The notes under the pieces are model-generated. The model did no database searches. It was not told the DNA's origin and was given only the letters and a program-made list of their open reading frames with translations. 64,000 nt of DNA, from contig OZ076415.1 in the NCBI GenBank assembly GCA_964187785.1, positions 48,050,001 to 48,114,000 of the forward strand. Reading direction: 5' to 3'. The position numbers were made by a program, and so were the translations under genes. Positions 1 through 39,539 of this stretch are shown in pieces; positions within the stretch are counted from its first letter, which is position 1; each line of letters opens with the position of its first letter. The stretch comes from Amphiscolops sp. MND2022 (lineage: Eukaryota).

Positions 1-1394
1 AAAGCCGGAGTATTCTCTCGTGTATTATCGGAATCTGACATAGAATCCAGGTCGAACCGCGATGAAATCTAGCACAACTTTCAGGTTAGGAAACGAAATC
101 TACCACGTTGAAAGCAACTGAAAGCACAAAAACCCAACAATGAGAACAGACAGAAAAAGGCGCGACGAGAGTCGAACCTAAAACCTTCTACATAGGAGAC
201 AGACACCTTATCCAATATGCCACGCAGCTGCGAGCATCAAAACATTCACCTAAAAGTGGTCATTACCTGAAAACGCAACGTCATCTATTCATCATTGCAG
301 CGCAGGCCTACGAAAAGCACAAATTGACAACATAGGAACGAACAAGAAAACAGCCAGGACGGGACTCGAACCCGCAATCTTCTACTTAGGAGACACACGC
401 TTCATCTATAAGGCCACGCGGCTGTGAGCATCAAAACAAGAAGCTGGAGGTTGTCATTACCTGAAAGCGCAACGTCATCTATTCATTGTTCCAGCGAAGG
501 CCAACAAAAAGCACAAATTGACAACATGGGAACCAACAAGAAAACAGCCACGACGGGACTCGAGCCCGCAATCTTCTACTTAGGAGGCAGACGCCTTATC
601 CATTAGGCCACGCGGCTGTGAGCATCCAAACATGAAGCTGAAGGTGATCATTGCCTGGAAACTCTACTTCATCCATTCATCGTTCCAGTGCAGACCAACA
701 AAAAGAATAATTTGACAAAATGGGAACCATTACGAAAACAGCCACGACGGGACTCGAACCCACAATCTTCTACTTAGGAGGCAGACGCCTTATCCATTAG
801 GCCACGCAGATGTGAGCATCCAAACATGAAGCTGAAGATGAAAGCTAACTGAAAAAGCCGGAGTATTCTCACGTGTATTATCGGAATCTGACATAGAATC
901 CAGGTCGAACCGCGATGAAATCTAGCACAACTTTCAGGAGGTTAAGGAAACGAAATCTACCACGTTGAAAGCAACTGAAAGCACAAAAACGCAACAATGA
1001 GAACAGACAGAAAAAGGCGCGACGAGAGTCGAACCTAAAACCTTCTACATAGGAGACAGACAACTTATCCAAAGCAGCTGCGAGCATCAAAACATTCACA
1101 TAAAAGTTGTCATTACCTGAAAACGCAACGTCATCTATTCATCGTTGCAGCGCAGACCTACGAAAAGCACAAATTGACAACATGGGAACGAACAAGAAAA
1201 CAGCCAGGGCGGGACTCGAAGCCGCAATCTTCTACTTAGGAGGCACACGCTTCATCTATAAGGCCACGCGGCTGTGAGCATCAAAACAAGAAGCTGAAGG
1301 TTGTCATTACCTGAAAACGCAACGTCATCTATTCATTGTTCCAGCGAAGGCCAACAAAAAGCACAATTTGACAACATGGGAACCAACAAGAAAA

Positions 1395-1467
1395 CAGCCA
1401 CGACGGGACTCGAACCCGCAATCTTCTACTTAGGAGGCAGACGCCTTATCCATTAGGCCACGCGGCT
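1395..1467 (-). tRNA. tRNA-Arg(CCT), canonical intact copy
   Basis: Minus strand AGCCGCG TG GCCT AATGGATA AGGC G TCTGC CTCCTAA GTAGA AGATT GCGGG TTCGAGT CCCGT CGTGGCT G = 73 nt. All four stems pair (with G:U), anticodon CCT, A box TGGCCTAATGG, B box GGTTCGAGTCC, TTTT terminator immediately 3'. D and anticodon arms closely resemble known eukaryotic tRNA-Arg-CCT. Confidence 0.93.
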
Positions 1468-2052
1468 GTGAGCATCCAAACATGAAGCTGAAGGTGATCA
1501 TTGCATGAAAGCTCTACTTCATCCATTCATCGTTCCAGTGCAGACCAACAAAAACAATAATTTGACAAAATGGGAACCATTAGGAAAACAGCCACGACGG
1601 GACTCGAACCCACAATCTTCTACTTAGGAGGCAGACGCCTTATTCATTAGGCCACGCAGATGTGAGCATCCAAACATGAAGCTGAAGATGAAAGCCAACT
1701 GAAAAAGCCGGAGTATTCTCTCGTGTATTATCGGAATCTGACATAGAATCCAGGTCGAACCGCGATGAAATCTAGCACAACTTTCAGGAGGTCAGGAAAC
1801 GAAATCTACCACGTTGAAAGCAACTGAAAGCACAAAAACCCAACAATGAGGACAGACAAAGGCGCGATGAAAGTCGAACCTAAAACCTTCTACATAGGAG
1901 ACAGACACCTTATCCAATATGCCACGCAGCTGCGAGCATCAAAACATTCACCTAAAAGTGGTCATTACCTGAAAACGCAACGTCATCTATTCATTGTTCC
2001 AGCGAAGGCCAACAAAAAGCACAAATTGACAACATGAGAACAAACAAGAAAA

Positions 2053-2125
2053 CAGCCACGACGGGACTCGAACCCGCAATCTTCTACTTAGGAGGCAGAC
2101 GCCTTATCCATTAGGCCACGCGGCT
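2053..2125 (-). tRNA. tRNA-Arg(CCT), canonical intact copy
   Basis: Identical to the 73-nt canonical sequence at 1395-1467, followed by TTTT on the minus strand. Confidence 0.9.
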
Positions 2126-2709
2126 GTGAGCATCCAAACATGAAGCTGAAGGTGATCAATGCCTGAAAACTCTACTTCATCCATTCATCGTTCCAGCGCA
2201 GACCAACGAAAAGAACAAATTGACAAAATGGGAACCATTACGAAAACAGCCACGACGGACTCGAACCCACAATCTTCTACTTAGGAGGCAGACGCCTTAT
2301 CCATTAGGCCACGCGGCTGTGAGCATCCAAACATGAAGCTGAAGATGAAAGCTAACTGAAAAATCGGAGTATTCTCTCGTGTATTATCGGAACTCAGCAT
2401 CTGACATAGAATCCAGGTCGAACCGCGATGAAATCTAGCACAACGTTCAGGAGGTTAGGAAACGAAATCTACCACATTGAAAGCACAAAAACACAAGAAT
2501 GAGAACAGACAGAAAAAAGCGCGACGAGAGTCGAACCTAAAACCTTCTACATAGGAGACAGACACCTTATCCAATATGCCACGCAGCTGCGAGCATCAAA
2601 ACATTCACCTAAAAGTGGTCATTACCTGAAAACGCAACGTCATCTATTCATTGTTCCAGCGAAGGCCAACAAAAAGCACAATTTGACAACATGGGAACCA
2701 ACAAGAAAA

Positions 2710-2782
2710 CAGCCACGACGGGACTCGAACCCGCAATCTTCTACTTAGGAGGCAGACGCCTTATCCATTAGGCCACGCGGCT
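2710..2782 (-). tRNA. tRNA-Arg(CCT), canonical intact copy
   Basis: Identical to the canonical 73-nt sequence. Confidence 0.9.
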
Positions 2783-5079
2783 GTGAGCATCCAAACATGA
2801 AGCTGAAGGTGATCATTGCCTGAAAACTCTACTTCATCCATTCATCGTTCCAGTGCAGACCAACAAAAAGAATAATTTGACAAAATGGGAACCATTACGA
2901 AAACAGCCACGACGGGACTCGAACCCACAATCTTCTACTTAGGAGGCAGACGCCTTATCCATTAGGCCACGCAGATGTGAGCATCCAAACATGAAGCTGA
3001 AGATGAAAGCTAACTGAAAAAGCCGGAGTATTCTCTCGTGTATTATCGGAATCTGACATAGAATCCAGGTCGAACCGCGATGAAATCTAGCACAACTTCC
3101 AGGAGGTTAGGAAACGAAATCTACCACGTTGAAAGCAACTGAAAGCACAAAAACCCAACAATGAGAACAGACAGAAAAAGGCGCGACGAGAGTCGAACCT
3201 AAAACCTTCTACATAGGAGACAGACACCTTATCCAATATGCCACGCAGCTGCAAGCATCAAAACATTCACCTAAAAGTGGTCATTACCTGAAAACGCAAC
3301 GTCATCTATTCATCGTTGCAGCGCAGGCCTACGAAAAGCACAAATTGACAACATGGGAACGAACAAGAAAACAGCCAGGGCGGGACTCGAAGCCGCAATC
3401 TTCTACTTAGGAGGCACACGCTTCATCTATAAGGCCACGCGGCTGTGAGCATCAAAACAAGAAGCTGAAGGTTGTCATTACCTGAAAACGCAACGTCATC
3501 TATTCATTGTTCCAGCGAAGGCCAACAAAAAGCACAAGTTGACAACATGGGAACCAACAAGAAAACAGCCACGACGGGACTCGAACCCGCAATCTTCTAC
3601 TTAGGAGGCAGACGCCTTATCCATTAGGCCACGCGTCTGTGAGCATCCAAACATGAAGCTGAAGGTGATCATTGCCTGAAAACTCTACTTCATCCATTCA
3701 TCGTTCCAGTGCAGACCAACAAAAAGAATAATTTGACAAAATGGGAACCTTTAGGAAAACAACCACGACGGGACTCGAACCCACAATCTTCTACTTAGGA
3801 GGCAGACGACTATCCATTAGGCCACGCAGATGTGAGCATCCGAACATGAAGCTGAAGATGAAAGCTAACTGAAAAAGCCGGAGTATTCTCTCGTGTATTA
3901 TCGGAATCTGACATAGAATCCAGGTCGAACCGCGATGAAATCTAGCACAACTTTCAGGTTAGGAAACGAAATCTACCACGTTGAAAGCAACTGAAAGCAC
4001 AAAAACCCAACAATGAGAACAGACAGAAAAAGGCGCGACGAGAGTCGAACCTAAAACCTTCTACATAGGAGACAGACACCTTATCCAATATGCCACGCAG
4101 CTGCGAGCATCAAAACATTCACCTAAAAGTGGTCATTACCTGAAAACGCAACGTCATCTATTCATTGTTCCAGCGAAGGCCAACAAAAAGCACAAATTGA
4201 CAACATGAGAACAAACAAGAAAACAGCCACGACGGGACTCGAACCCGCAATCTTCTACGTAGGAGGCAGACGCTTCATCTATAAGGCCACGCGGCTGTGA
4301 GCATCAAAACAAGAAGCTGAAGGTTGTCATTACCTGAAAACGCAACGTCATCTATTCATTGTTCCAGCGAAGGCCAACAAAAAGCACAATTTGACAACAT
4401 GGGAACCAACAAGAAAACAGCCACGACGGGACTCGAACCCGCAATCTTCTACTTAGGAGGCAGACGCCTTATCCATTAGGCCACGGGGCTGTGAGCATCC
4501 AAACATGAAGCTGAAGGTGATCATTGCTTGAAAACTCTACTTCATCCATTCATCGTTCCAGTGCAGACCAACAAAAAGAATAATTTGACAAAATGGGAAC
4601 CATTAGGAAAACAGCCACGACGGGACTCGAACCCACAATCTTCTACTTAGGAGGCAGACGCCTTATCCATTAGGCCACGCAGATGTGAGCATCCAAACAT
4701 GAAGCTGAAGATGAAAGCTAACTGAAAAAGCCGGAGTATTCTCTCGTGTATTATCGGAATCTGACATAGAATCCAGGTCGAACCGCGATGAAATCTAGCA
4801 CAACTTTCAGGAGGTTAGGAAACGAAATCTACCACGTTGAAAGCAACTGAAAGCACAAAAACCCAACAATGAGAACAGACAGAAAAAGGCGCGACGAGAG
4901 TCGAACCTGAAACCTTCTACATAGGAGACAGACACCTTATCCAATATGCCACGCAGCTGCGAGCATCAAAACATTCACCTAAAAGTGGTCATTACCTGAA
5001 AACGCAACGTCATCTATTCATTGTTCCAGCGAAGGCCAACAAAAAGCACAAATTGACAACATGAGAACAAACAAGAAAA

Positions 5080-5152
5080 CAGCCACGACGGGACTCGAAC
5101 CCGCAATCTTCTACTTAGGAGGCAGACGCCTTATCCATTAGGCCACGCGGCT
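5080..5152 (-). tRNA. tRNA-Arg(CCT), canonical intact copy
   Basis: Identical to the canonical 73-nt sequence. Confidence 0.9.
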
Positions 5153-6588
5153 GTGAGCATCCAAACATGAAGCTGAAGGTGATCATTGCCTGGAAACTCT
5201 ACTTCATCCATTCATCGTTCCAGCGCAGACCAACGAAAAGAACAAATTGACAAAATGGGAACCATTACGAAAACAGCCACGACGGACTCGAACCCACAAT
5301 CTTCTACTTAGGAGGCAGACGCCTTATCCATTAGGCCACGCGGCTGTGAGCATCCAAACATGAAGCTGAAGATGAAAGCTAACTGAAAAATCGGAGTATT
5401 CTCTCGTGTATTATCGGAACTCAGCATCTGACATAGAATCCAGGTCGAACCGCGATGAAATCTAGCACAACGTTCAGGAGGTTAGAAAACGAAATCTACC
5501 ACATTAAAAGCACAAAAACACAACAATGAGAACAGACAGAAAAAGGCGCGACGAGAGTCGAACCTAAAACCTTCTACATAGGAGACAGACACCTTATCCA
5601 ATATGCCACGCAGCTGCGAGCATCAAAACATTCACCTAAAAGTGGTCATTACCTGAAAACGCAACGTCATCTATTCATTGTTCCAGCGAAGGCCAACAAA
5701 AAGCACAATTTGACAACATGGGAACCAACAAGAAAACATCCACGACGGGACACGAACCCGCAATCTTCTACTTAGGAGGCAGACGCCTTATCCATTAGGC
5801 CACGCGGCTGTGAGCATCCAAACATGAAGCTGAAGGTGATCATTGCCTGAAAACTCTACTTCATCCATTTATCGTTCCAGTGCAGACCAACAAAAAGAAT
5901 AATTTGACAAAATGGGAACCATTACGAAAACAGCCACGACGGGACTCGAACCCACAATCTTCTACTTAGGAGGCAGACGCCTTATCCATTAGGCCACGCG
6001 GCTGTGAGCATCCAAACATGAAGCTGAAGGTGATCATTGCCTGAAAACTCTACTTCATCCATTCATCGTTCCAGCGCAGACCAACGAAAAGAACAAATTG
6101 ACAAAATGGGAACCATTACGAAAACAGCCACGACGGACTCGAACCCACAATCTTCTACTTAGGAGGCAGACGCCTTATCCATTAGGCCACGCGGCTGTGA
6201 GCATCCAAACATGAAGCTGAAGGTGAAAGCTAACTGAAAAATCGGAGTATTCTCTCGTGTATTATCGGAACTCAGCATCTGACATAGAATCCAGGTCGAA
6301 CCGCGATGAAATCTAGCACAACGTTCAGGAGGTTAGGAAACGAAATCTACCACATTGAAAGCACAAAAACACAACAATGAGAACAGACAGAAAAAGGAGC
6401 GACGAGAGTCGAACCTGAAACCTTCTACATAGGAGACAGACACCTTATCCAATATGCCACGCAGCTGCGAGCATCAAAACATTCACCTAAAAGTGGTCAT
6501 TACCTGAAAACGCAACGTCATCTATTCATTGTTCAAGCGAAGGCCAACAAAAAAGCACAAATTGACAACATGAGAACAAACAAGAAAA

Positions 6589-6661
6589 CAGCCACGACGG
6601 GACTCGAACCCGCAATCTTCTACTTAGGAGGCAGACGCCTTATCCATTAGGCCACGCGGCT
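6589..6661 (-). tRNA. tRNA-Arg(CCT), canonical intact copy
   Basis: Identical to the canonical 73-nt sequence. Confidence 0.9.
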
Positions 6662-6897
6662 GTGAGCATCCAAACATGAAGCTGAAGGTGATCATTGCCT
6701 GAAAACTCTACTTCATCCATTCATCGTTCCAGCGCAGACCAACGAAAAGATCAAATTGACAAAATGGGAACCATTACGAAAACAGCCACGACGGGACTCG
6801 AACCCACAATCTTCTACTTAGGAGGCAGACGCCTTATCCATTAGGCCACGCGGCTGTGAGCATCCAAACATGAAGCTGAAGATGAAAACTAACTGAA

Positions 6898-7183
6898 GCA
6901 CAGAGGCGAAGCGGTGCTTCGCAACACATGACGAAGACATTATTTTAATATGCGTATATTTATTATTTTAATCGCATGCGTATATATTCAAATGTTCAAC
7001 TTTGTTCAATAACGTCCCTATGGCACAGTGGTCAACACTTATGCCGTGCAATCGGGAGGCAGCAGGTTCGAATCTCTCAGGGGTTTTGGCTTTTATCTAA
7101 AAGGCGCTCATTATGAAGTTGACTATTGTGGAAAAAAAAACTTTCTTAGCTGGACTGCAATGCACATTGACTTCGTCATGTGC
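6898..7183 (-). mobile_element. 286-bp non-autonomous Helentron/Helitron2-like element (HINE architecture) inserted in the array spacer
   Basis: Absent from all other spacer copies and inserted within an A run (tgaa|...|aaaaag). Asymmetric inverted repeats CACATGACGAAG (6925-6936) / CTTCGTCATGTG (7171-7182). Perfect hairpin GCGAAGC-ggt-GCTTCGC (6906-6922) lies outside one subTIR, and the other subTIR sits in a terminal hairpin (7162-7183). No clear TSD beyond the A run. Confidence 0.72.
7014..7087 (+). promoter_or_regulatory. tRNA-like Pol III internal promoter cassette (A box + B box + T4) inside the 286-bp element
   Basis: A box TGGCACAGTGG (7021-7031), B box GGTTCGAATC (7065-7074), partial acceptor pairing TCCCT/AGGGG, TTTT at 7084-7087. 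Anticodon and T stems do not pair well, so this is not a functional tRNA. Confidence 0.65.
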
Positions 7184-7930
7184 AAAAAGCGGAGTATTCT
7201 CTCGTGTATTATCGGAACTCAGCATCTGACATAGAATCCAGGTCGAACCGCAACGAAATCTAGCACAACATTCAGGAGGTTAGGAAACGAAATCTACCAC
7301 ATTAAAAGCAACTGAAGGCACAAAAACGCAACAATGAGAACAGACAAAAAAAGCGCGACGGGAGTCGAACCCAAATTCTTCTACATAGAAGACAGACACC
7401 TTATCCATTATGCCACGCAGCTGCGAGCATCAAAACAGTCACCTGAAAGTGGTCATTACCTGAAAACGCAACGTCATCTATTCATCGTTCCAGCGCAGGC
7501 CAATGAAAAGCACAAATTGACAACATGGAAACGAACAACAAAACAGCCAGGACGTGACCCGAACCCGCAATCTTTACTCAGAAGGCAGGCGCTTTATCTA
7601 TTAGGCCACGCGGCTGTGAGCATCCGAACAAGAAGCTGAAGGTGATCATTGCCTGAAAACGCAACGTCATTTATTCATCGTTCCAGCGCAGGCCAACGAA
7701 AAGCACAAATTGACAACATGGGAACGAACAACAAAACAGCCAGGACGGGACTCCAACCCGCAATCTTCTACTTAGGAGGCAGACGCATTATCTATTAGGC
7801 CACGCGGCTGTGAGCATCAAAACAAGAAGCTGAAAGGTGTAATTACCTGAAAACGCAACGTCATCTATTCATTGTTCCAGCGCAGGCCAACAAAAAGCAC
7901 AAATTGACAACATGGAAACAAACAAGAAAA

Positions 7931-8003
7931 CAGCCACGACGGGACTCGAACCCGCAATCTTCTACTTAGGAGGCAGACGCCTTATCCATTAGGCCACGCG
8001 GCT
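7931..8003 (-). tRNA. tRNA-Arg(CCT), canonical intact copy
   Basis: Identical to the canonical 73-nt sequence. Confidence 0.9.
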
Positions 8004-11000
8004 GTGAGCATCGAAACATGAAGCTTAAAATGAAAGCTAACTTAAAAAGGCGGAGTATTCTCTCGTGTATTATCGGAACTCAGCATCTGACATAGAATCC
8101 TGGTCGAACCGCGATGAAATCTAGCACAACGTTCAAGAGGTTAGGAAACGAAATCTACCACATCAAAAGCAACTGAAGGCACAAAAACGCAACAATGAGA
8201 GCAGACAAAAAAAGGCGCGACGGGAGTCGAACCCAAATTCTTCTACATAGAAGACAGACACCTTATCCATTATGCCACGCAGCTGCGAGCATCAAAACAG
8301 TCACCTGAAAGTGGTCATTACCTGAAAACGCAACGTCATCTATTCATCGTTCCAGCGCAGGCCAATGAAAAGCACAAATTGACAACATGGAAACGAACAA
8401 CAAAACAGCCAGGACGGGACCCGAACCCGCAATCTTTTACTTAGAAGGCAGGCGCCTTATCTATTAGGCCAGGCGGCTGTGAGCATCCGAACAAGAAGCT
8501 GAAGGTGATCATTGCCTGAAAACGCAACGTCATCTATTCATCGTTCCAGCGCAGGCCAACGAAAAGAACAAATTGACAACATGGGAACGAACAACAAAAC
8601 AGCCAGGACGGGACTCCAACCCGCAATCTTCTACTTAGGAGGCAGACGCCTTATCTATTGGGCCACGCGGCTGTGAGCATCCGAACAAGAAGCTGAAGGT
8701 GATCATTGCCTGAAAACGCAACTTCATCTATTCATCGTTCCAGCGCAGACCAACGAAAAGAACAAATTGACAACATGGGAACCATTACGAAAACAGCCAC
8801 GACGGGACTCGAACCCGCAATCTTCTACTTAGGAGGCAGACGCTTTATCCATTAGGCCACGCGGCTGTGAGCATCCAAACATGAAGCTGAAGATGAAAGC
8901 TAACTGAAAAAAGGGAAGTATTCTCGTGTATTATCGGAACTCAGCATCTGACATAGAATCCAGGTCGAACCGCGATGAAATCTAGCACAACGTTCGGGAG
9001 GTTAGGAAACGAAATCTACCACATTGAAAGCAACTGAAAGCACAAAAACGCAACAATGAGAACATACAGAAAAAGGCGCGACGGGAGTCGAACCTAAAAC
9101 CTTCTACATAGGAGACAGACAACTTATCCAACGCAGCTGCGAGCATCAAAACATTCACCTAAAAGTGGTCATTACCTGAAAACGCAACGTCATCTATTCA
9201 TCGTTGCAGCGCAGGCCTACGAAAAGCACAAATTGACAACATGGGAACGAACAAGAAAACAGTCAGGACGGGACTCGAACCCGCAATCTTCTACTTAGGA
9301 CGCAGACGGCTTATCCATTAGTCCACGCGGCTGTGAGCACCCAAACATGAAGCTGAAGGTGATCATTGCCTGAAAACTCTACTTCATCCATTCATCGTTC
9401 CAGCGCATACCAACGAAAAGAACAAATTGACAAAATGGGAAGCATTACGAAAACAGCCACGACGGGACTCGAACCCGCAATCTTCTACTCAGGAGGCAGA
9501 CGCCTTATCCATTAGGCCATGCGGCTGTGAGCATCCAAACATGAAGCTGAAGATGAAAGCTAACTGAAAAAGGCGGAGTAGTCTCTCGTGTATTATCGGA
9601 ACTCAGCATCTGACATAGAATCCAGGTCGAACCGCGATGAAATCTAGCACAACTTTCAGGAGGTTAGGAAACGAAATCTACCACATTGAAAGCACAAAAA
9701 CGCAACAATGAGAACAGACAGAAAAAGGCGCGACGAGAGTCGAACCTAAAACCTACATAGGAGACAGACACCTTATCCAATATGCCACGCAGCTGCGAGC
9801 ATCAAAACATTCACCTAAAAGTGGTCATTACCTGAAAACGCAACGTCATCTATTCATTGTTCCAGCGTAGGCCAACAAAAAGCACAAATTGACAACATGG
9901 GAACAAACAAGAAAACAGCCACGACGTGACTCGAACCGCAATCTTCTACTTAGGAGGCACACGCCTTATCCATTAGGCCACGCGGCTGTGAGCATCAAAA
10001 CATGAAGCTGAAGATGAAAGCTAACTGAAAAAGGCGGAGTATTCTCTCGTGTATTATCGGAACTCAGCATCTGACATAGAATCCAGGTCGAACCGCGATG
10101 AAATCTAGCACAACGTTCAGGAGGTTAGGAAACGAAATCTACCACATTAAAAGCAACTGAAAGCACAAAAACGCAACAATGAGGACAGACAAAAAAGGCG
10201 CGACGGGAGTCGAACCCAAATTCTTCTACATAGAAGACAGACACCTTATCCATTATGCCACGCAGCTGCGAGCATCAAAACAGTCAACTGAAAGTGGTCA
10301 ATACCTGAAAACGCAACGTCATCTATTCATCGTTCCAGCGCAGGCCAATGAAAAGCACAAAATGACAACATCGAAACGAACAACAAAACAGCCAGGACGG
10401 GACCCGAACCCGCAATCTTCTACTTAGGAGGCAGGCGCCTTATCTATTAGGCCACGCGGCTGTGAGCATCCGAACAAGAAGCTGAAGGTGATCATTGCCT
10501 GAAAACGCAACGTCATCTATTCATCGTTCCAGCGCAGGCCAACGAAAAGCACAAATTGACAACATGGGAACGAAAACAAAACATCCAGGACGGGACTCCA
10601 ACCCGCAATCTTCTACTTAGGAGGCACACGCGGCTGTGAGCATCCGAACAAGAAGCTGAAGGTGATCATTGCCTGAAAACGCAACTTCATCTATTCATCG
10701 TTCCAGTGCAGACCAACGAAAAGAACAAATTGACAACATGGGAACCATTACGAAATCAGCCACGACGGGACTCGAACCCGCAATCTTCTACTTAGGAGGC
10801 AGACTCCTTATCCATTAGGCCACGCGGCTGTGAGCATCCAAGCATCAAGCTGAAGATGATAGCTAACTGAAAAAGGCGGAGTATTCTCTCGTGTATTATC
10901 GGAACTCTGCATCTAACATAGAATCCAGGTCGAACCGCGATGAAATCTAGCACAACGTTCGGGAGGTTAGGAAACGAAACCTACCACAATGAAAGCAACT

Positions 11001-17958: not shown

Positions 17959-18553
17959 GTGAGCATCCAAGCATGAAGCTGAAGATGGAAGCTATTTGAA
18001 AAAGGCAGAGTATTCTCTCGTGTATTATCGGAACTCAGCATCTGACATAGAATCCAGGTCGAACCGCGATGAAATCTAGCACAACGTTCAGGAGGTTAGG
18101 AAGCGAAATCTACCACATTGAAAGCAACTGAAAGCACAAAAACGCAACAATGAGAACAGACAAAAAAGGCGCGAAGGGAATCGAACCCAAAACCTTCTAC
18201 ATGGGAGACAGACACCTTATCCATTATGCCACGCAGCTGCGAGCATCAAAACACTCACCTGAAAGTGGTCATTGCCTGAAAACGCAACGTCATCTATTCA
18301 TCGTTCCAGCGCAGGCCAATGAGAAGAACAAATTGACAACATGGGAACCATTACGAAAACAGCCACGACGGGACTCGAACCCGCAATCTTTTACTTAGGA
18401 GGCAGACGCCTTATCCATTAGGCCACGCGGCTGTGAGCATCCAAGCATGAAGCTGAAGGTGATCGCTGCCTGGAAACTCTACTTCAACCATTCATCGTTC
18501 CACCGCAGACCAACGAAAAGAACAAATTGACAAAATGGGAACCATTACGAAAA

Positions 18554-18626
18554 CAGCCACGACGGGACTCGAACCCGCAATCTTCTACTTAGGAGGCAGA
18601 CGCCTTATCCATTAGGCCACGCGGCT
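18554..18626 (-). tRNA. tRNA-Arg(CCT), canonical intact copy (rightmost perfect copy I found)
   Basis: Identical to the canonical 73-nt sequence. Confidence 0.9.
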
Positions 18627-21600: not shown

Positions 21601-24600
21601 TAGCTGAAGGTGCAAACTAACTGCAAAAGGCGGAGTATACTCTCGTGTATTATCGGAACTCAGCATCTAACATGTATTCCTAGTCAAACTCGCATTGAAA
21701 TCTAGCACAACATTCGGGAGGTTAGGAAACGAAATATATCACAACTGAACGCAACTGATAGCACAAAAACGCAACAAGGAGAACTGACAAAAAGAGCCGC
21801 GAAGGGAGTCGAACACGCAACCTTCTACTTAGGAGGCAGACACTTTTTCCAATAGGCCACGCATCTGTGAGCATTAAAACATTCAGCTAGAAGTGATCAT
21901 TACCTGAAAACGCAGTCTCATGCATTTATCGTTCCAGCGCAGGCCAAAGAGAAATACAAATAGACATGGAAACCAACAATAAAACAGCCACCACGGGACA
22001 CGAACCCACAATCTTCTACTTAGGAGGCAGAGGCCGAATTCATTAGGCCATGCAGCTGTGAGCATTTAAACATGTAGCTTGAGGTGAAAGCTAACTGAAA
22101 AAGGCGGAGTATACTCTCGTGTATTATCGGAACTCAGTGTCTAACATGTAATCCGAGTCTAACTCGCTATGAAATCGAGCACAACGTTCAAGATGTTCGA
22201 AAACGGAATCTATCACATTGAAAGCGACTGATACCACCAAAGCGCAACAATGAGAACTGACAAAAAGAGCCGCGAAGGGAGTCGAACACGCAACCTTCTA
22301 CTCAGGAGGCAGACACTCTTTCCAATAGCCCACGCAGCTGTGAGCATTAAAACATTCAGCTAGAAGAGATCATTACCTGAAAACGCAGTCTCATGCATTT
22401 ATCGTTCCAGCGCAGGCCAAAGAGAAACACAAATTGACATGGAAACCAACAATAAAACAGCCACCACGGGACACGAACCCACAATCTTCTATTCAGGAGG
22501 CAGAGGCCGAATTCATTAGGCCATGCAGCTGTGAGCATTTAAACATGTAGCTTGAGGTGAAAGCTAACTGAAAAAGGCGGAGTATACTCTCGTGTATTAT
22601 CGGAACTCAGTGTCTAACATGTAATCCGAGTCGAACTCGCTATGAAAACGAGCACAACGTTCAAGAGGTTTGAAAACGGAATGTATCACATTGAAAGCGA
22701 CTGATACCACCAAAACGCAACAATGAGAACTGACAAAAAGAGCCGCGGAGGGAGTCGAACACGCAACCTTCTACTTAGGAGGCAGACACTTTTTCCAATA
22801 GCCCACGCAGCTGTGAGCATTAAAACATTCAGCTAGAAGAGATCATTACCTGAAAACGCAGTCTCATGCATTTATCGTTCCAGCGCAGGCCAAAGAGAAA
22901 CACAAATTGACATGGAAACCAACAATAAAACAGCCACCACGGGACACGAACCCACAATCTTCTATTTAGGAGGCAGAGGCCGAATTCATTAGGCCATGCA
23001 GCTGTGAGCATTTAAACATGTAGCTTGAGGTGAAAGCTAACTGAAAAAGGCGGAGTATACTCTCGTGTATTATCGGAACTCAGTGTCTAACATGTAATCC
23101 GAGTCGAACTCGCTATGAAAACGAGCACAACGTTCAAGAGGTTTGAAAACGGAATCTATCACATTGAAAGCGACTGATACCACCAAAACGCAACAATGAG
23201 AACTGACAAAAAGAGCCGCGAAGGGAGTCGAACACGCAACCTTCTACTTAGGAGGCAGACACTTTTTCCAATAGGCCACGCATCTGTGAGCATTAAAACA
23301 TTCAGCTAGAATTGATCATTACCTGAAAACGCAGTCTCATGCATTTATCGTTCCAGCGCAGGCCAAAGGAAACACAAATAGACATGGAAACCAACAATAA
23401 AACAGCCACCACGGGACACGAATCCACAATCTTCTACTTAGGAGGCAGAGGCCGAATTCATTAGGCCATGCAGCTGTGAGCATTTAAACATGTAGCTTGA
23501 GGTGAAAGCTAACTGAAAAAGGCGGAGTATACTCTCGTGTATTATCGGAACTCAGTGTCTAACATGTAATCCGAGTCGAACTCGCTATGAAATCGAGCAC
23601 AACGTTCAAGATGTTCGAAAACGGAATCTATCACATTGAAAGCGACTGATACCACCAAAGCGCAACAATGAGAACTGACAAAAAAGAGCCGCGAAGGGAG
23701 TCGAACACGCAACCTTCTACTTAGGAGGCAGACACTTTTTCCAATAGCCCACGCAGCTGTGAGCATTAAAACATTCAGCTAGAAGTGATCATTACCTGAA
23801 AACGCAGTCTCATGCGTTTATCGTTCCAGCGCAGGCCAAAGAGAAACACAAATAGACATGGAAACCAACAATAAAACAGCCACCACGGGACACGAACCAA
23901 CAATCTTCTACTTAGGAGGCAGAGGCCGAATTCATTAGGCCATGCAGCTGTGAGCATTTAAACATGTAGCTTGAGGTGAAAGCTAACTGAAAAAGGCGGA
24001 GTATACTCTCGTGTATTATCGGAACTCAGTGTCTAACGTGTAATCCGAGTCGAACTCGCTATGAAATCGAGCACAACGTTCAAGATGTTCGAAAACGGAA
24101 TCTATCACATTGAAAGCGACTGATACCACCAAAGCGCAACAATGAGAACTGACAAAAAGAGCCGCGAAGGGAGTCGAACACGCAACCTTCTACTTAGGAG
24201 GCAGACACTTTCTCCAATAGCCCACGCAGCTGTGAGCATTAAAACATTCAGCTAGAAGTGATCATTACCTGAAAACGCAGTCTCATGCATTTATCGTTCC
24301 AGCGCAGGCCAAAGAGAAACACAAATAGACATGGAAACCAACAATAAAACAGCCACCACGGGACACGAACCCACAATCTTCTACTTAGGAGACAGAGGCC
24401 GAATTCATTAGGCCATGCAGCTGTGAGCATTTAAACATGTAGCTTGAGGTGAAAGCTAACTGAAAAAGGCGGAGTATACTCTCGTGTATTATCGGAACTC
24501 AGTGTCTAACATGTAATCCGAGCCGAACTCGCTATGAAAACGAGCACAACGTTCAAGAGGTTTGAAAACGGAATCTATCACATTGAAAGCGACTGATACC

Positions 24601-27600
24601 ACCAAAACGCAACAATGAGAACTGACAAAAAGAGCCGCGAAGGGAGTCGAACACGCAACCTTCTACTTAGGAGGCAGACACTTTTTCCAATAGGCCACGC
24701 ATCTGTGAGCATTAAAACATTCAGCTAGAATTAATCATTACCTGAAAACGCAGTCTCATGCATTTATCGTTCCAGCGCTGGCCAAAGAGAAACACAAATA
24801 GACATGGAAACCAACAATAAAACAGCCACCACGGGACACGAACCCGCAATTTTATACCTTGGAGGCAGACGCTGTATCCATTAGGCCACTCGACTGTGAG
24901 CATCCAACATTCAGCTGAAGAAAAACATATTCTGAAAACGCAAAGTCATCCATTTATCGTTCCAGTACAGGCCATCGAAAAGCACACATTGACAACATGG
25001 GAACCAAAAACAAAACAGCCATGACGAGATTCGGAACCGCAACCTTCCACTTAGGAGGCAGATGCCTTATCCATTAGGCGACGCAGCGGTGAATATCAAA
25101 ACATTCATCCAAAGAAAAACATTAGCTGAAAACGTAAAGTCATCTATTTATCGTTCCAGCACAGGCAACAAAAAGCACACATTGACAACATGGGAACCAA
25201 CAAGAAAACAGCCATGACGGGACTCGAACCCGGAATCTTCTACTTAGGAGGCAGACACCTTATCCATTAGACCATGTGGCAATGAGCATCAAAACATTTT
25301 AGCAATTATTCATTACCTGGATACGCAGTGTTATGCATTTCTTTCCAGCGCAGCCCAAAGAGAAGCACAAATAGACATGGGAACCAACAAGAAAACAGCC
25401 ACCACGGGACACGAACCCACAATCTTCTACTTAGGTGGCAGAGGCCGAATTCATTAGGCCATGCAGCTGTGAGCATTTAAACATGTAGCTTGAGGTGAAA
25501 ACTAACTGAAAAAGGCGGAGTATACTCTCGTGTATCATCGGAACTCAGTGTCTAACATGTAATCCGAGTCGAACTCGCTATGAAATCGAGCACAACGTTC
25601 AAGATGTTCGAAAACGGAATCTATCACATTGAAAGCGACTGATACCACCAAAGCGCAACAATGAGAACTGACAAAAAGAGCCGCGAAGGGAGTCGAACAC
25701 GCAACCTTCTACTTAGGAGGCAGACACTTTTTCCAATAGCCCACGCAGCTGTGAGCATTAAAACATTCAGCTAGAAGTGATCATTACCTGAAAACGCAGT
25801 CTCATGCATTTATCGTTCCAGCGCAGGCCAAAGAGAAACACAAATAGACATGGAAACCAACAATAAAACAGCCACCACGGGACACGAACCCGCAATCTTC
25901 TACTTAGGAGGCAGACACCTTATCCATTAGACCATGTGGCAATGAGCATCAAAACATTTTAGCAATTATTCATTACCTGGATACGCAGTGTTATGCATTT
26001 ATCTTTCCAGCGCAGCCCAAAGAGAAGCACAAATAGACATGGGAACCAACAAGAAAACAGCCACCACGGGACACGAACCCACAATCTTCTACTTAGGAGG
26101 CAGAGGCCGAATTCATTAGGCCATGCAGCTGTGAGCATTTAAACATGTAGCTTGAGGTGAAAACTAACTGAAAAAGGCGGAGTATACTCTCGTGTATCAT
26201 CGGAACTCAGTGTCTAACATGTAATCCGAGTCGAACTCGCTATGAAATCGAGCACAACGTTCAAGATGTTCGAAAACGGAATCTATCACATTGAAAGCGA
26301 CTGATACCACCAAAGCGCAACAATGACAACTGACAAAAAGAGCCGCGAAGGGAGTCGAACACGCAACCTTCTACTTAGGAGGCAGACACTTTTTCCAATA
26401 GCCCACGCAGCTGTGAGCATTAAAACATTCAGCTAGAAGTGATCATTACCTGAAAACGCAGTCTCATGCATTTATCGTTCCAGCGCAGGCCAAAGAGAAA
26501 CACAAATAGACATGGAAACCAACAATAAAACAGCCACCACGGGACACGAACCCACAATCTACTCAGGAGGCAGAGGCCGAATTCATTAGGCCATGCAGCT
26601 GTGAGCATTTAAACATGTAGCTTGAGGTGAAAGCTGACTGAAAAAGGCGGAGTATACTCTCGTGTATTATCGAAACTCAGTGTCTAACATGTAATCCGAG
26701 CCGAACTCGCTATGAAAACGAGCACAACGTTCAAGAGGTTTGAAAACGGAATCTATCATATTGAAAGCGACTGATACCACCAAAACGCAACAATGAGAAC
26801 TGACAAAAAGAGCCGCGAAGGGAGTCGAACACGCAACCTTCTACTTAGGAGGCAGACACTTTTTCCAATAGGCCACGCATCTGTGAGCATTAAAACATTC
26901 AGCTAGAATTAATCATTACCTGAAAACGCAGTCTCATGCATTTATCGTTCCAGCGCAGGCCAAAGAGAAACACAAATAGACATGGAAACCAACAATAAAA
27001 CAGCCACCACGGGACACGAACCCGCAATTTTATACCTTGGAGGCAGACGCTGCATCCATTAGGCCACTCGACTGTGAGCATCCAACATTCAGCTGAAGAA
27101 AAACATATTCTGAAAACGCAAAGTCATCCATTTATCGTTCCAGTACAGGCCATCGAAAAGCACACATTGACAACATGGGAACCAAAAACAAAACAGCCAT
27201 GACGAGATTCGGAACCGCAACCTTCCACTTAGGAGGCAGATGCCTTATCCATTAGGCGACGCAGCGGTGAATATCAAAACATTCATCCAAAGAAAAACAT
27301 TAGCTGAAAACGTAAAGTCATCTATTTATCGTTCCAGCACAGGCAACAAAAAGCACACATTGACAACATGGGAACCAACAAGAAAACAGCCATGACGGGA
27401 CTCGAACCCGCAATCTTCTACTTAGGAGGCAGACACCTTATCCATTAGACCATGTGGCAATGAGCATCAAAACATTTTAGCAATTAATCATTACCTGGAT
27501 ACGCAGTGTTATGCATTTATCTTTCCAGCGCAGTCCAAAGAGAAGCACAAATAGACATGGGAACCAACAATAAAACAGCCACGACAGGACTCGAACACGC

Positions 27601-27852
27601 AATGTTTTACTTAGGAGGCAGACGCTTTATCCATCAGGTCACGCATCTGTGAGCATCCTAACATGTAGCTGAAGGTAAAAACTAACTGAAAAGGCGGAGT
27701 ATACTCTCCTGTATTACCGGAACCCAGTATCTAACATGAAATCCAAGTCAAACTCCCGATTAAATCTAACACAACGTTCGGGAGGTTAAGAAACGAAACC
27801 TATCACATTGAGAGCAACTGATAGAACAAAAACGCAACTAAAGCAACAGACA

Positions 27853-28387
27853 ACAAGACGGGAACGTCCCAAGTCGGCGCCATATCTTAGGCTCAAAAAT
27901 ATTCAAGGAACAACTATTGGAAAAAATTGGAAAAAAAATATTTTCTTTTCAAAAAAATTATTTTTGAATTTTTTTCCGAAAAAAGTATTTTTCAAGTCGC
28001 ACAATGCCGAAAAACTCAGAGTCCATTCAGGCTCATTCAACGTTTTCTACAAACCGAAAACTTCAAAAAAATGCAAGGGGGTACCCTTTGAAAAATTTCG
28101 AAAATTTTCGAAAAAAGTCGCATAGTGCCGAAAAAAACCCAAAGGGGGGGGGGACCCTTTGGTCTCACCTGTACTTTTGGAAGGAATTAAAAAATTTATG
28201 GTTTAGTGCGAGAATCGAACCCACGCTCTCCGGCTGGGTCGAAGATGGAAGATGAACAAATCTGAAAGATGAACAAATTGTAAGAAAAGTGGACCACTCA
28301 GAGTGAGATTGTCAACTGAAAAAAAAACAAAAAAAACTACTCACTGTAAGAGTCGGGCTTTTTTCCTTAAGGGAAAAGGCGCCGACT
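27853..28387 (-). mobile_element. ~535-bp non-autonomous Helentron-like element (AGTCGGCGCC family)
   Basis: Hairpin GGGA-acg-TCCC (27860-27870) then subTIR AGTCGGCGCC (27872-27881). The other end has GGCGCCGACT (28378-28387) within a long terminal hairpin (28351-28387). Inserted in the A run (minus-strand T terminator) of a tRNA pseudogene. Confidence 0.75.
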
Positions 28388-30191
28388 AAAAACCAGCCGC
28401 GAAGGGAGTCGAACCCACAATCTTCTAAGGAGGCAGACACCTTATCCATTAGGCCATGTGGCTATGAGCATCAAAACACTTTAGATATTGTAAATCATTA
28501 CCTGAAAACGCAGTGTCATGCATTTATCGTTCCAGCGCAGGCCAAAGAGAAGCACAAAAGGACATAAGAACCAACAATAAAACAGCCACCACGGGACTCG
28601 AACTCGCAATCTTCTAGTTAGGAGGCAGACGCTTCAATCATCAGGTCACGCAGCTGTGAGCATCCTAACATGTAGCTGAAGGTGAAAGCTAACTGAAAAA
28701 GGGGGAGTATACTCTCGTGTATTATCGGAACTCACCATCTAACATGTAATCCAAGTCAAACTCGCAATAAAATCTAGCACAAGGTCGGGAGGTTAGGAAA
28801 CGAAATCTATCACATTGCAAGCATCTGGTAGAGCAAAAACGCAACGAAGATAACAGACAAAAAAACCACCGCGAAGGGAGTCGAACACGCAACCTTCTAC
28901 TTAGGAGGCAGACACTTTTTCCAATAGCCCACGCAGCTGTGAGCATTAAAAGATTCAGCTAGAAGTGATCATTACCTGAAAACGCAGTCTCATGCATTTA
29001 TCGTTCCAGCGCAGGCCAAAGAAAAACACAAATAGACATGGAAACCAACAATAAAACAGCCACCACGGGACACGAACCCACAATCTTCTACTTAGGAGGC
29101 AGAGGCCGAATTCATTAGGCCATGCAGCTGTGAGCATTTAAACATGTAGCTTGAGGTGAAAGCTAACTGAAAAAGGCGGAGTATACTCTCGTGTATTATC
29201 GGAACTCAGTGTCTAACATGTAATCCGAGTCGAACTCGCTATGAAATCGAGCACAACGTTCAAGAGGTTTGAAAACGGAATCTATCACATTGAAAGCGAC
29301 TGATACCACCAAAACGCAACAATGAGAACTGACAAAAAGAGCCGCGAAGGGAGTCGAACACGCAACCTTCTACTTAGGAGGCAGACACTTTTTCCAATAG
29401 GCCACGCATCTGTGAGCATTAAAACATTCAGCTAGAAGTGATCATTACCTGAAAACGCAGTCTCATGCATTTATCGTTCCAGCGCAGGCCAAAGAGAACA
29501 CAAATAGACATGGAAACCAACAATAAAACAGCCACCACGGGACACGAACCCGCAATTTTATACCTTGGAGGCAGACGCTGTATCCATTAGGCCACTCGAG
29601 TGTGAGCATCCAACATTCAGCTGAAGAAAAACATATTCTGAAAACGCAAAGTCATCCATTTATCGTTCCAGTACAGGCCATCGGAAAGCACACATTGACA
29701 ACATGGGAACCAAAAACAAAACAGCCATGACGAGATTCGGAACCGCAACCTTCCACTTAGGAGGCAGATGCCTTATCCATTAGGCGACGCAGCGGTGAAT
29801 ATCAAAACATTCATCCAAAGAAAAACGTTAGCTGAAAACGTAAAGTCATCTATTTATCGTTCCAGCACAGGCAACAAAAAGCACACATTGACAACATGGG
29901 AACCAACAAGAAAACAGCCACGACAGGACTCGAACACGCAATGTTTTACTTAGGAGGCAGACGCTTTATCCATCAGGTCACGCAGCTGTGAGCATCCTAA
30001 CATGTAGCTGAAGGTAAAAACTAACTGAAAAGGCGGAGTATACTCTCCTGTATTACCGGAACCCACTATCTAACATGAAATCCAAGTCAAACTTCCGATT
30101 AAATCTAACACAACGTTCGGGAGGTTAAGAAACGAAATCTATCACATTGAGAGCAACTGATAGAACAAAAACGCAACTAAAGCAACAGACA

Positions 30192-30725
30192 ACAAGACGG
30201 GAACGTCCCAAGTCGGCGCCATATCTTAGGCTCAAAAATATTCAAGGAACAACTATTGGAAAAATTAGGAATAAAAATTTTTTTTTTTCAAAAAAAATAT
30301 TTTTGATTTTTTTTCCGAAAAAAAGTATTTTTCAAGTCGCACAATGCCGAAAAACTCAGAGTCCATTCAGGCTCATTCAACGTTTTCTACAAACCGAAAA
30401 CTTCAAAAAAATGCAAGGGGGTACCCTTTGAAAAATTTCGAAAATTTTCGAAAAAAGTCGCATAGTGCCGAAAAAAAACCCAAAGGGGGGGACCCTTTGG
30501 TCTCACCTGTACTTTTGAAAGGAATTAAAAAATTTATGGTTTAGTGCGAGAATCGAACCCACGCTCTCCGGCTGGGTCGAAGATGGAAGATGAACAAATA
30601 TGAAAGATGAACAAATTGTAAGAAAAGTGGACCACTCAGAGTGAGATTGTCAACTGAAAAAAAAACAAAAAAAACTACTCACTGTAAGAGTCGGGCTTTT
30701 TTTCCTAAGGGAAAAGGCGCCGACT
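30192..30725 (-). mobile_element. Second, near-identical copy of the AGTCGGCGCC-family element at the equivalent array position
   Basis: Same ends and same flanks (gcaacagac|...|aaaaaccagccgc) as 27853-28387, offset 2339 bp. Confidence 0.75.
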
Positions 30726-31607
30726 AAAAACCAGCCGCAAAGGGAGTCGAACCCACAATCTTCTAAGGAGGCAGACACCTTATCCATTAGGCCATGTGGC
30801 TATGAGCATCAAAACACTTTAGATATTGTAAACCTGAAAACGCAGTGTCATGCATTTATCGTTCCAGCGCAGGCCAAAGAGAAGCACAAAAGGACATAAG
30901 AACCAACAATAAAACAGCCACCACGGGACTCGAACTCGCAATCTTCTACTCAGGAGGCAGACGCTTCAACCATCAGGTCACGCAGCTGTGAGCATCCTAA
31001 CATGTAGCTGAAGGTGAAAGCTAACTGAAAAAGGGGGAGTATACTCTCGTGTATTATCGGAACTCAGCATCTAACATGTAATCCAAGTCAAACTCGCAAT
31101 AAAATCTAGCACAATGTCGGGAGGTTAGGAAACGAAATCTATCACATTGCAAGCATCTGGTAGAACAAAAACGCAACAAAGAAAACAGACAAAAAAACCA
31201 CCGCGAAGGGAGTCGATCCCACAATCCTCTACTTAGGAGGCAGACACCTTATCCACTAGGCCACGCAGCTGTGAGCACCCAAACGTGTAGCTGAAGGTGA
31301 AAGGTGAATGTGAAAAATGCTGTTTTTCAAATGCCAAAAATTGAGACTTCAAATCCATCCAAATTTCATGTTTCATTTCGAACCAACATCATTGTAACCT
31401 AGATGAAAATTCGGGGAAATCTCGGCTACTTTTTGAATTTCCAAGTTTTTCAAGTCAAATCAATTTGCAATAAGTCCTTTTTTTCACAGAATTGTAGAAC
31501 AAATAGCCCATATATGTGAACCCGGAATGTTAGACTGAAAGTTTCATCTTCGCATTATATTATGTAAGAGCAACCAAAAGCATTTCAGTGAGTTATAAAA
31601 AACTTAC

Positions 31608-39469: not shown

Positions 39470-39539
39470 AAAAAAAACTAAAAAGATTTTAAATATGCAA
39501 AGGAATACAAGTGATACGCATAAGACTAAAAACCTTTTT

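What the first reader, a model, noticed from the sequence alone, without database searches (positions are those of the whole stretch)
1..31300. >=31-kb single-isoacceptor tRNA-Arg(CCT) array organised like a higher-order satellite
Seen: ~135-140 same-strand copies of one tRNA (manual count), with ~11 perfect cloverleafs interleaved with fixed degenerate variant classes in ~45 higher-order units. Known: tandem tRNA arrays exist (Entamoeba STR-tRNA arrays, Xenopus tDNA repeats, the human 1q23 tRNA VNTR), but these typically carry intact genes, often of several isoacceptors. Inference: here a single tRNA gene for codon AGG has become the monomer of an alpha-satellite-like HOR array. It may act structurally (centromeric, pericentromeric or subtelomeric chromatin, or a TFIIIC/condensin platform) rather than to supply tRNA. 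This is the best candidate for an undescribed system in the window.
Basis: partly seen in the sequence, partly recalled or inferred. Interest (0 to 1): 0.9.

Follow-up and report, generated by a model that had tools for sequence, protein, structure and literature searches.

The report
Tandem tRNA-Arg gene array with pseudogenes
This animal genome holds a run of about 136 back-to-back copies of one arginine tRNA gene, of which only about 15 still look usable; it is a real and neatly layered repeat, but of a kind already described in other animals and plants.

Summary
Observation confirmed. Window 1-31,270 is a head-to-tail array, all on the minus strand, of 136 units derived from one tRNA-Arg(CCU) gene. 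ARAGORN, Rfam passes 88, 11 are identical perfect copies and 15 have no defect.

Two unit types, S (194 bp) and L (about 280 bp), alternate in higher-order blocks of 658/668 bp on the left and 473 bp on the right. There are 44 L units. Same-class units are 93-98% alike; different S classes are 79-90% alike.

The array is real. A second contig, with flank 97-99% identical, has it at the same junction but with a different internal structure. Read-derived contigs cross the junction at single-copy depth.

The perfect tRNAs sit in two unit classes whose spacers differ by 19% (P about 2e-7), so the gene itself is being kept. Degenerate units have lost stems and mostly the B box (4/38 intact on the right), which argues against a TFIIIC or structural platform.

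Best reading: a fast-changing tRNA gene cluster built by unequal crossing-over, with a minority of working genes and hitch-hiking pseudogenes.

Tandem tRNA/ncRNA arrays are already described in Hydractinia, Nematostella and Arabidopsis. Unchecked scan notes list other small-RNA arrays in this genome, and the scan had already noted this array's continuation in the neighbouring window. New member of a known kind.

The parts
1..31270 (-). The part of the tRNA-Arg(CCT) tandem array that lies in the window: 136 units plus one with a truncated tRNA. It continues beyond the left edge.
   Evidence: BLAST with the perfect copy; ARAGORN; Rfam; unit table.
1..19095 (-). Left domain. Blocks of one L unit followed by two or three S units (658, 668 or 852-862 bp), plus larger duplicated blocks of 948 and 1336 bp. 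It holds every intact copy in this window.
   Evidence: Class string and unit table; block identities of 91.5-99.1%; 15 of 86 copies defect-free, B box intact in 50/86.
1395..1467 (-). Reference perfect tRNA-Arg(CCU) gene, 73 nt. It has a full cloverleaf, A20 in the D loop and TTTT directly downstream. Identical copies lie at 2053-2125, 2710-2782, 5080-5152, 6589-6661, 7931-8003, 15602-15674, 16550-16622, 17218-17290, 17886-17958 and 18554-18626.
   Evidence: Rfam 64.9 bits with a full-length match to the model; 100% identity over 73 nt; pair check.
12855..12927 (-). Near-perfect copy with one variable-loop change and the same Rfam score as the perfect copies.
1274..1467 (-). Example S unit of 194 bp: tRNA of 73 nt, a TTTT terminator and a 121-nt spacer.
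16623..16902 (-). Example L unit of 280 bp: a degenerate tRNA-like head (anticodon CCC, 4 broken pairs, Rfam 34.5 bits) and a longer spacer. It is a diverged paralogue of the S unit.
   Evidence: Alignment of S and L units. The spacer has no Rfam match and no unusual fold, z +1.75.
12928..13208 (-). Chimeric unit. tRNA positions 1-45 are identical to the perfect gene and positions 46-73 plus the spacer are L-type. A twin lies at 14726-15006. This marks an exchange point inside the tRNA body.
   Evidence: (100% over query 1-45).
19096..21583 (-). Scrambled middle domain: 14 units of irregular length (91-288 bp), none repeated at the class threshold except one, all defective.
21584..31270 (-). 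Right domain. It consists of 473-bp dimers (191-bp D unit plus 282-bp E unit, TRF 7.1 copies at 96%) and a duplicated block of 2.2-2.3 kb. All copies are degenerate.
   Evidence: TRF row 21543-24903; B box intact in 4/38.
27871..28388 (-). 518-bp MITE-like insertion with terminal inverted repeat AGTCGGCGCC, inside an L unit just after the tRNA-like head. A second copy at 30210-30726 (96.9% identical) arose when the surrounding block was duplicated.
   Evidence: Alignment of the 815-bp units with normal units; coordinates and BLAST; word depth 3e5-9e5 against 22-100 for unique flank.
6898..7183 (.). 286-bp single-copy insertion in an L unit. It carries a tRNA-like segment in the opposite orientation to the array.
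   Evidence: Alignment of unit 6856-7422 with unit 8004-8284, and BLAST showing one copy in the window.
31228..31527 (.). Right junction of the array with unique flank. The last tRNA-like copy ends at about 31,270.
   Evidence: Read-derived contigs span 31228-31527 at 1.0x flank depth in runs X1 and X3 (table 8). The same junction is in the second assembly.

Best explanation
This is a lineage-specific, fast-changing tandem cluster of nuclear tRNA-Arg(CCU) genes.

Origin. The ancestral unit was a tRNA gene with internal A and B boxes, a TTTT terminator right behind it, and a spacer. It duplicated head to tail and diverged into a short (S) and a long (L) form. Blocks of several units were then re-amplified by unequal crossing-over or replication-based duplication, which gives the higher-order periodicity. 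The exchange points often fall inside the tRNA body, because that is the stretch all unit classes still share.

Present state. A minority of units, 11 perfect and about 15 defect-free in this window, remain ordinary Pol III genes that supply tRNA-Arg(CCU) for AGG codons. They are kept identical by purifying selection, probably helped by gene conversion. The other roughly 120 units are pseudogenes that persist because they are amplified and lost together with their neighbours.

Shown: the anatomy, the higher-order identities, the constraint on the intact tRNA sequence, the decay of the promoter boxes in dead units, the structural difference between two assemblies, and continued block duplication after a transposon insertion.

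Inferred: the recombination mechanism, transcription of the intact copies, and their use in translation.
For: Anatomy:
- 136 same-strand copies; 132 of them have TTTT within 15 nt of the tRNA part.
- The perfect copy scores 64.9 bits on RF00005 over the full model. All 21 stem pairs are standard, with U33, anticodon CCT and A37.

Constraint:
- The 11 perfect copies sit in two unit classes, 6 in B and 5 in A. The spacers of those classes differ by 19.2% in substitutions. The chance of no change in 73 nt at that rate is 1.8e-7.
- Within classes A and B, diversity in the tRNA part is 0.45 and 0.70 of that in the spacer. In the dead classes C, G and D it is 2.3-5.4 times the spacer.

Higher order:
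- Same-class units are 93-98% identical and S classes are 79-90% identical to one another.
- Copies of whole blocks reach 98.7-99.1% identity.

Exchange inside the tRNA: units at 12928 and 14726 have a perfect 5' 45 nt joined to an L-type 3' part.

Turnover:
- A second contig whose flank is 97-99% identical has the same right junction. It carries four long units of about 810-830 bp instead of two, and a perfect copy plus two 98.6% copies within 4 kb of the edge, where the window has only dead copies.
- A MITE inserted in one unit is now present twice.

Reality:
- Read-derived contigs cover the junction at 1.0x flank depth. Right-domain pieces lie at 1.6-4.9x.

Demand and precedent:
- AGG is 14 of 63 Arg codons in the two neighbouring exons, a small sample.
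- Unequal crossing-over and concerted evolution were inferred for the Arabidopsis tRNA triplet array (PMC2886086).
- Tandem tRNA arrays are reported in Hydractinia and Nematostella (PMC11067881).
Against: - No expression data. No RNA run was identified, and ordinary RNA-seq would not show tRNAs anyway.
- I could not see the rest of the genome, so I do not know whether other tRNA-Arg(CCT) genes exist outside the array. If they do, the array copies could be redundant or silenced, as the Arabidopsis cluster is in most tissues (PMC12308677).
- Identity of the tRNA part across classes could in principle come from gene conversion alone rather than from selection.
- Only about one unit in nine is intact, which is a heavy load of dead copies for a locus kept for supply.
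Confidence: 0.62

Rival explanations
1. Neutral satellite. The whole array, intact copies included, is silent repetitive DNA that merely originated from a tRNA gene. The perfect copies reflect recent amplification and gene conversion, not use. tRNA-Arg(CCU) is supplied from elsewhere.
For: - About 120 of 136 units are defective.
- Block copies as close as 98.7-99.1% show recent amplification.
- The structure differs between two assemblies.
- The Arabidopsis tRNA array was judged to fluctuate in copy number under drift (PMC2886086) and is silenced in most tissues (PMC12308677).
Against: - Perfect tRNAs persist in two classes whose spacers are 19% apart. Within each class the spacers are about 6% apart, yet all 11 tRNAs are identical.
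- Dead classes show the opposite pattern, with the tRNA part more variable than the spacer. So conversion alone does not keep tRNA parts uniform.
Confidence: 0.25
2. Structural chromatin element. The array serves as a centromeric, pericentromeric or subtelomeric satellite, or as a TFIIIC/condensin platform or boundary, rather than as a source of tRNA.
For: - It has the higher-order repeat architecture typical of satellites.
- In the left domain, 50 of 86 units keep a B box and 67 of 86 an A box.
- tRNA genes and a human tRNA repeat have been proposed as boundary elements (PMC4041453).
Against: - The B box is not preferentially kept. Only 57/136 are intact overall and 4/38 in the right domain, and changes are spread over the whole tRNA body.
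- The array is small, 31 kb here and about 48 kb by an unchecked note.
- It lies 30 kb from a HEATR5 coding exon, in DNA with transposon remains.
- It is structurally variable.
- No tRNA array was found within about 44 kb of the same exon in a related species.
Confidence: 0.07
3. Assembly artefact, or a satellite derived from a tRNA-SINE. Either the array is an over-expanded or mis-joined repeat, or its monomer is a retroposed tRNA-derived SINE rather than a gene with its spacer.
For: - Repeats of this type are hard to assemble.
- Only 24-30% of sampled words from the left domain are found in the runs, against 68-94% for the flank.
- tRNA-related tandem repeats of suspected SINE origin are known in amphibians (PMC12054243).
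Against: - A second contig from another assembly carries the array at the same junction.
- Read-derived contigs span the junction at single-copy depth, and right-domain pieces lie at a few times the flank depth.
- Units have TTTT directly after the tRNA, no A-rich or LINE-like tail, and no dispersed copies in the 33-kb flank.
Confidence: 0.04

Closest known systems
Tandem arrays of tRNA and other small-RNA genes in the cnidarians Hydractinia and Nematostella (Schnitzler et al. 2024, PMC11067881)
   Same: An animal genome in which evenly spaced head-to-tail arrays of tens to hundreds of near-identical copies carry tRNA genes with similar spacers. Other Pol III/ncRNA genes are arrayed in the same genome; here that rests on unchecked scan notes of vault-RNA, snoRNA-like and tRNA-His-like arrays.
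   Different: [quoted passage not shown] The passages I read do not mention a two-unit (S/L) higher-order structure or a large majority of fixed pseudogene classes. The present animal is probably a bilaterian close to acoels: its nearest named protein, at 57% identity, is from Symsagittifera roscoffensis.
Arabidopsis thaliana chromosome 1 tRNA Ser/Tyr/Tyr (SYY) cluster (PMC2886086, PMC12308677)
   Same: A multi-unit block is the unit of amplification. Unequal crossing-over and concerted evolution were inferred, and copy number differs between close relatives. Function is conditional rather than structural.
   Different: It carries two isoacceptors in a triplet unit and the genes are treated as functional pre-tRNA genes. 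It is a plant, in methylated heterochromatin. Here there is one isoacceptor, most units are dead, and there is no CpG depletion (observed/expected 0.9-1.0).
Entamoeba tRNA gene arrays (PMC2652664)
   Same: Tandem arrays with tRNA genes as the core of the repeat unit. A structural role has been discussed.
   Different: In Entamoeba almost all tRNA genes are arrayed. Units hold up to five different tRNAs with microsatellite-like spacers, and the arrays make up over 10% of the genome. Here the array has a single isoacceptor and complex spacers without short tandem repeats.
Human 1q23.3 tRNA variable-number tandem repeat (PMC4041453)
   Same: A copy-number-variable tandem repeat carrying tRNA genes. 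It has been proposed as a boundary element.
   Different: The unit is 7.3 kb, GC-rich and binds CTCF, with 9-43 units per allele. Here the units are 194-283 bp and there is no evidence of insulator sites.
Satellites derived from Pol III genes: newt tandem repeat from retroposed tRNA-Glu (Nagahashi 1991, as cited in PMC12054243) and higher-order 5S rDNA in pikes (PMC5437419)
   Same: A Pol III gene sequence serves as the satellite monomer. The pike 5S arrays show higher-order organisation together with many variant copies.
   Different: The newt family is said to derive from a retroposed copy. The present units show no retroposon features and still include perfect genes.
Alpha-satellite-type higher-order repeats
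   Same: Unit classes are 10-21% apart, while copies of whole blocks are up to 99% identical. Neighbouring blocks are slightly more alike than distant ones.
   Different: The scale is tens of kb rather than hundreds of kb to Mb. Several short domains have different block types rather than one homogeneous array. No centromere evidence exists. The monomer is a gene with a terminator.

Membership tests
Eukaryotic nuclear tandem tRNA gene array (tDNA cluster) | Head-to-tail repeat units, each containing a tRNA gene, in one orientation | tested here: met
   136 copies, all on the minus strand, with modal spacing of 194 and about 280 bp.
Eukaryotic nuclear tandem tRNA gene array (tDNA cluster) | Units carry structurally intact tRNAs with internal A and B boxes and a Pol III terminator | tested here: met
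   Met for a minority. Eleven are perfect and 15 defect-free; 44 have both boxes intact; 132/136 have TTTT.
Eukaryotic nuclear tandem tRNA gene array (tDNA cluster) | The genes are transcribed and yield mature tRNA | not testable with these tools
   No RNA run was identified. Sequence constraint on the intact copies is indirect support only.
Satellite DNA with higher-order repeats (alpha-satellite type) | Monomer classes clearly diverged, while copies of the multi-monomer block are much more alike | tested here: met
   S classes are 79-90% identical to one another, units within a class 93-98%, and blocks 91.5-99.1%.
Satellite DNA with higher-order repeats (alpha-satellite type) | Long homogeneous arrays of hundreds of kb to Mb of one block type | tested here: not met
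   There are three domains with different block types within 31 kb. Total length is about 48 kb if the unchecked note s1-175780 is right.
Satellite DNA with higher-order repeats (alpha-satellite type) | Centromeric position and CENP-A chromatin | not testable with these tools
   The only positional fact is that the window lies more than 41 Mb into its sequence piece. A coding exon lies 30 kb away.
SINE- or retroposon-derived tandem repeat | tRNA-related head joined to an unrelated body with an A-rich or LINE-like tail, plus dispersed copies | tested here: not met
   TTTT follows the tRNA directly, there is no A-rich tail, and the spacer runs straight into the next tRNA. There are no copies in the 33-kb flank.
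TFIIIC-only sites (ETC-like B-box arrays) | B box conserved independently of the rest of the tRNA-like sequence | tested here: not met
   The B box is intact in 57/136 units and in 4/38 in the right domain. Changes in the T stem and loop are as frequent as elsewhere in the tRNA.

The most novel reading that the evidence does not exclude
Besides supplying tRNA, the array may act as a chromatin element. Its left domain still carries dozens of A and B boxes, and could be a dense TFIIIC/Pol III/condensin loading zone or boundary. Together with the other small-RNA gene arrays noted in this genome, it might mark a genome-wide way of organising Pol III genes in a bilaterian, arisen independently of the cnidarian cases.
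Probability: 0.08. Interest if true: 0.6.

Novelty: new member of a known kind. Interest (0 to 1): 0.3.

Why it matters
The array is a clean, fully resolved example of how a housekeeping Pol III gene turns into a layered repeat. In 31 kb one can read three things: the split into two unit types, the re-amplification of blocks with exchange points inside the tRNA body, and the contrast between a few copies held identical and many left to decay.

If the animal is indeed an acoel relative, this would extend the small-RNA-gene tandem arrays reported for cnidarians to a distant animal lineage. Acoel placement is a lead resting on one protein match. It gives a natural system for asking how many copies of a tRNA gene a cell really uses.

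It does not open a new kind of system.

Tried and rejected
- **Taxon.** The protein atlas gave no taxa for the neighbouring HEATR5 exon, and the homologue search gave no names. Cluster members finally gave one named relative, Symsagittifera roscoffensis, at 57% identity. This is a lead, not an identification.
- **Walking into the array.** In the second assembly no genes are called inside the array, so the walk stopped about 8 kb in. An exact look-up of an 82-aa array ORF found nothing.
- **Related species.** Five loci covering about 44 kb downstream of the orthologous exon hold no tRNA, and the intergenic DNA does not align. Absence further away cannot be claimed.
- **Metagenome scan.** A JGI metagenome scan for the 42-nt tRNA core gave 0 hits.
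- **RNA evidence.** The run search returned only runs of unknown kind that also hold the flank, presumably DNA.
- **Methylation-driven decay.** CpG observed/expected is 0.9-1.0 in the array and the flank, so there is no signal. Thirteen of the 14 possible CpG transitions do occur among variants.
- **A second RNA gene in the long spacer.** There is no Rfam match and no unusual fold.


Full report
**Observation**

ARAGORN finds 74 tRNA genes in the window. All are on the minus strand, all lie between 544 and 31,271, and nearly all are tRNA-Arg(CCT). Rfam's tRNA model passes 88 matches at the gathering score, 12 of them at 64.9 bits over the whole model.

A BLAST search with one perfect copy (window:1395-1467:-) finds 136 copies from 185 to 31,266, every one on the minus strand. 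None lies in the remaining 33 kb. Eleven copies are identical over all 73 nt.

A per-copy table shows that the few calls of Thr, Gly or Gln are the same sequence with a point change in the anticodon. Fifteen copies have anticodon CCT, no indel and no broken stem pair. I count 44 long units.

**Anatomy**

Cutting the array at each tRNA 5' end gives two main unit sizes, about 194 bp (S) and about 280 bp (L).
- An S unit is the 73-nt tRNA, TTTT, and a 121-nt spacer.
- An L unit has a degenerate tRNA-like head and a longer spacer.
- The two align end to end, so they are diverged paralogues of one ancestral unit.

Clustering all units gives recurring classes whose order repeats.
- On the left (1-19,095), one L unit is followed by two or three S units, giving blocks of 658, 668 or about 855 bp.
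- In the middle (19,096-21,583) there is a scrambled stretch.
- On the right (21,584-31,270) there are 473-bp S+L dimers (TRF: 7.1 copies, 96% matches) plus a duplicated block of 2.2-2.3 kb.

Units of one class are 93-98% identical and different S classes are 79-90% identical. Copies of whole blocks are 91.5-99.1% identical. That is a true higher-order pattern, but in several short domains rather than one homogeneous array.

TTTT follows the tRNA part in 132 of 136 units. The long spacer has no Rfam match and folds no better than shuffled sequence.

**Is it real?**

The HEATR5 exon at 61,055-63,601 has a 99%-identical product on a 582-kb ENA contig. Walking along that contig shows a flank 97-99% identical to the window, so it is another haplotype or individual.

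The same array starts at the same junction, but its inside differs.
- It has four long units of about 810-830 bp instead of two.
- It has a perfect tRNA plus two 98.6% copies within 4 kb of the right edge, where the window has only dead copies.

Contigs built from public reads of two samples cross the junction (31,228-31,527) at the depth of the unique flank. Right-domain pieces lie at 1.6-4.9 times that depth, as expected for variants present a few times.

The array is therefore not an assembly artefact, and it changes structure on the time scale of haplotype divergence. One caution: the second contig may come from the same read set as the window's assembly, so it is independent as a haplotype and as an assembler, but perhaps not as a specimen.

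**Gene or satellite?**

The 11 perfect tRNAs sit in two unit classes, six in B and five in A. The spacers of those classes differ by 19.2% in substitutions. At that rate the chance of no change in 73 nt is 1.8e-7. Even within a class the spacers are about 6% apart.

Within classes A and B the tRNA part has 0.45 and 0.70 of the diversity of the spacer. In the dead classes C, G and D it has 2.3-5.4 times as much.

The excess in dead classes comes from mosaic tRNA parts. For example, the units at 12,928 and 14,726 join a perfect 5' 45 nt to an L-type 3' part. So exchanges take place inside the tRNA body, which is the one stretch all classes share.

Together these results say two things. The intact gene sequence is under constraint, and the dead copies are not.

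**The structural idea**

If the array served as a TFIIIC platform, the B box should outlast the rest of the tRNA. It does not.
- The B box is intact in 57 of 136 units, and in 4 of 38 in the right domain.
- The A box is intact in 88 of 136.
- Changes are spread evenly over the stems and loops.

Other points also weigh against it.
- The array is 31 kb here. An unchecked note from the neighbouring window puts a further 17 kb or so to the left, about 48 kb in all.
- It lies 30 kb from a coding exon, with transposon remains between.
- In a related species (84% identical protein), about 44 kb downstream of the same exon holds no tRNA. This does not prove absence further away.
- CpG is not depleted, so there is no sign of long-term methylated heterochromatin.

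I cannot test centromere proteins or chromatin contacts.

**Mechanism, as I read it**

A tRNA-Arg(CCU) gene with its spacer duplicated in tandem and split into S and L forms. Multi-unit blocks were then repeatedly duplicated and lost by unequal exchange.

A few copies are kept as working Pol III genes, and the rest ride along. A high-copy MITE of 518 bp has word depth 3e5-9e5 against 22-100 for unique DNA. It inserted into one L unit and is now present twice here, and the second contig has four long units of the same size. So block duplication went on even in the dead domain.

AGG makes up 14 of 63 arginine codons in the two neighbouring exons (a small sample), so the tRNA is needed.

**What is known**
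- The Hydractinia genome paper reports tandem arrays of tens to hundreds of near-identical copies for tRNAs of all 20 amino acids, several snRNAs, U3 and rRNAs. It also finds 5S, tRNA and U5 arrays in Nematostella (PMC11067881).
- A survey of 74 eukaryotes found tRNA clusters of very different size and make-up between lineages (PMC2888827).
- The Arabidopsis Ser/Tyr/Tyr array is a triplet-unit tRNA repeat explained by unequal crossing-over with concerted evolution (PMC2886086). It is silent except in root-cap cells (PMC12308677).
- tRNA-related tandem repeats are recorded in amphibians and fishes (PMC12054243; PMC11955569).
- Unchecked notes of this scan list a tRNA-His-like array, a 63-copy vault-RNA array and a snoRNA-like array of about 320 copies in the same genome. 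They also include a note on this same array in the neighbouring window.
- The nearest named relative of the flanking protein is the acoel Symsagittifera roscoffensis, at 57% identity. The acoel genome paper in the library does not contain the word tRNA.

**Verdict**

It is best read as a tRNA gene cluster with a large load of pseudogenes, a new member of a known kind. The proposed structural role is not supported by the tests available, but it is not excluded.

Noticed in passing
window 27871-28388 and 30210-30726; related pieces at about 35939-36202, 39020-39470 and 59458-59488: A 518-bp MITE-like element with terminal inverted repeat AGTCGGCGCC and an internal tRNA-like T-arm motif. Read-derived word depth is 3e5-9e5 against 22-100 for unique flank, so it is present in thousands of copies in this genome.
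   Followed up: partly
window 6898-7183: A 286-bp single-copy insertion inside an L unit, carrying a tRNA-like segment in the opposite orientation to the array and ending in a GC-rich hairpin. The scan already noted it as a Helentron-like mini-element (s1-152112). I confirmed only the insertion and its limits.
   Followed up: partly
window 52052-54663: A tandem repeat of 291 bp x 9 copies at 95% identity, between the array and the HEATR5 exon. In the second assembly, BLAST pieces align at multiples of about 291 bp across the same place, which suggests a different copy number; I did not count the copies there.
   Followed up: no
window 61055-63601 (-); L001 3620-6436: Two very long uninterrupted exons (848 and 938 codons) of a HEATR5/Laa1-type HEAT-repeat gene. 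The nearest named relative is from the acoel Symsagittifera roscoffensis, at 57% identity.
   Followed up: partly
window 45118-45651 (+): A reverse-transcriptase fragment (Pfam RVT_1, E 1.7e-10) in the flank, presumably a decayed retroelement.
   Followed up: no
L006 (reverse-complemented) about 4250-7740: In the second assembly the block holding the MITE-bearing long unit occurs four times instead of two, and intact tRNA copies lie next to it. So the polarity seen in the window, with live copies on the left and dead ones on the right, is not fixed in the species.
   Followed up: partly
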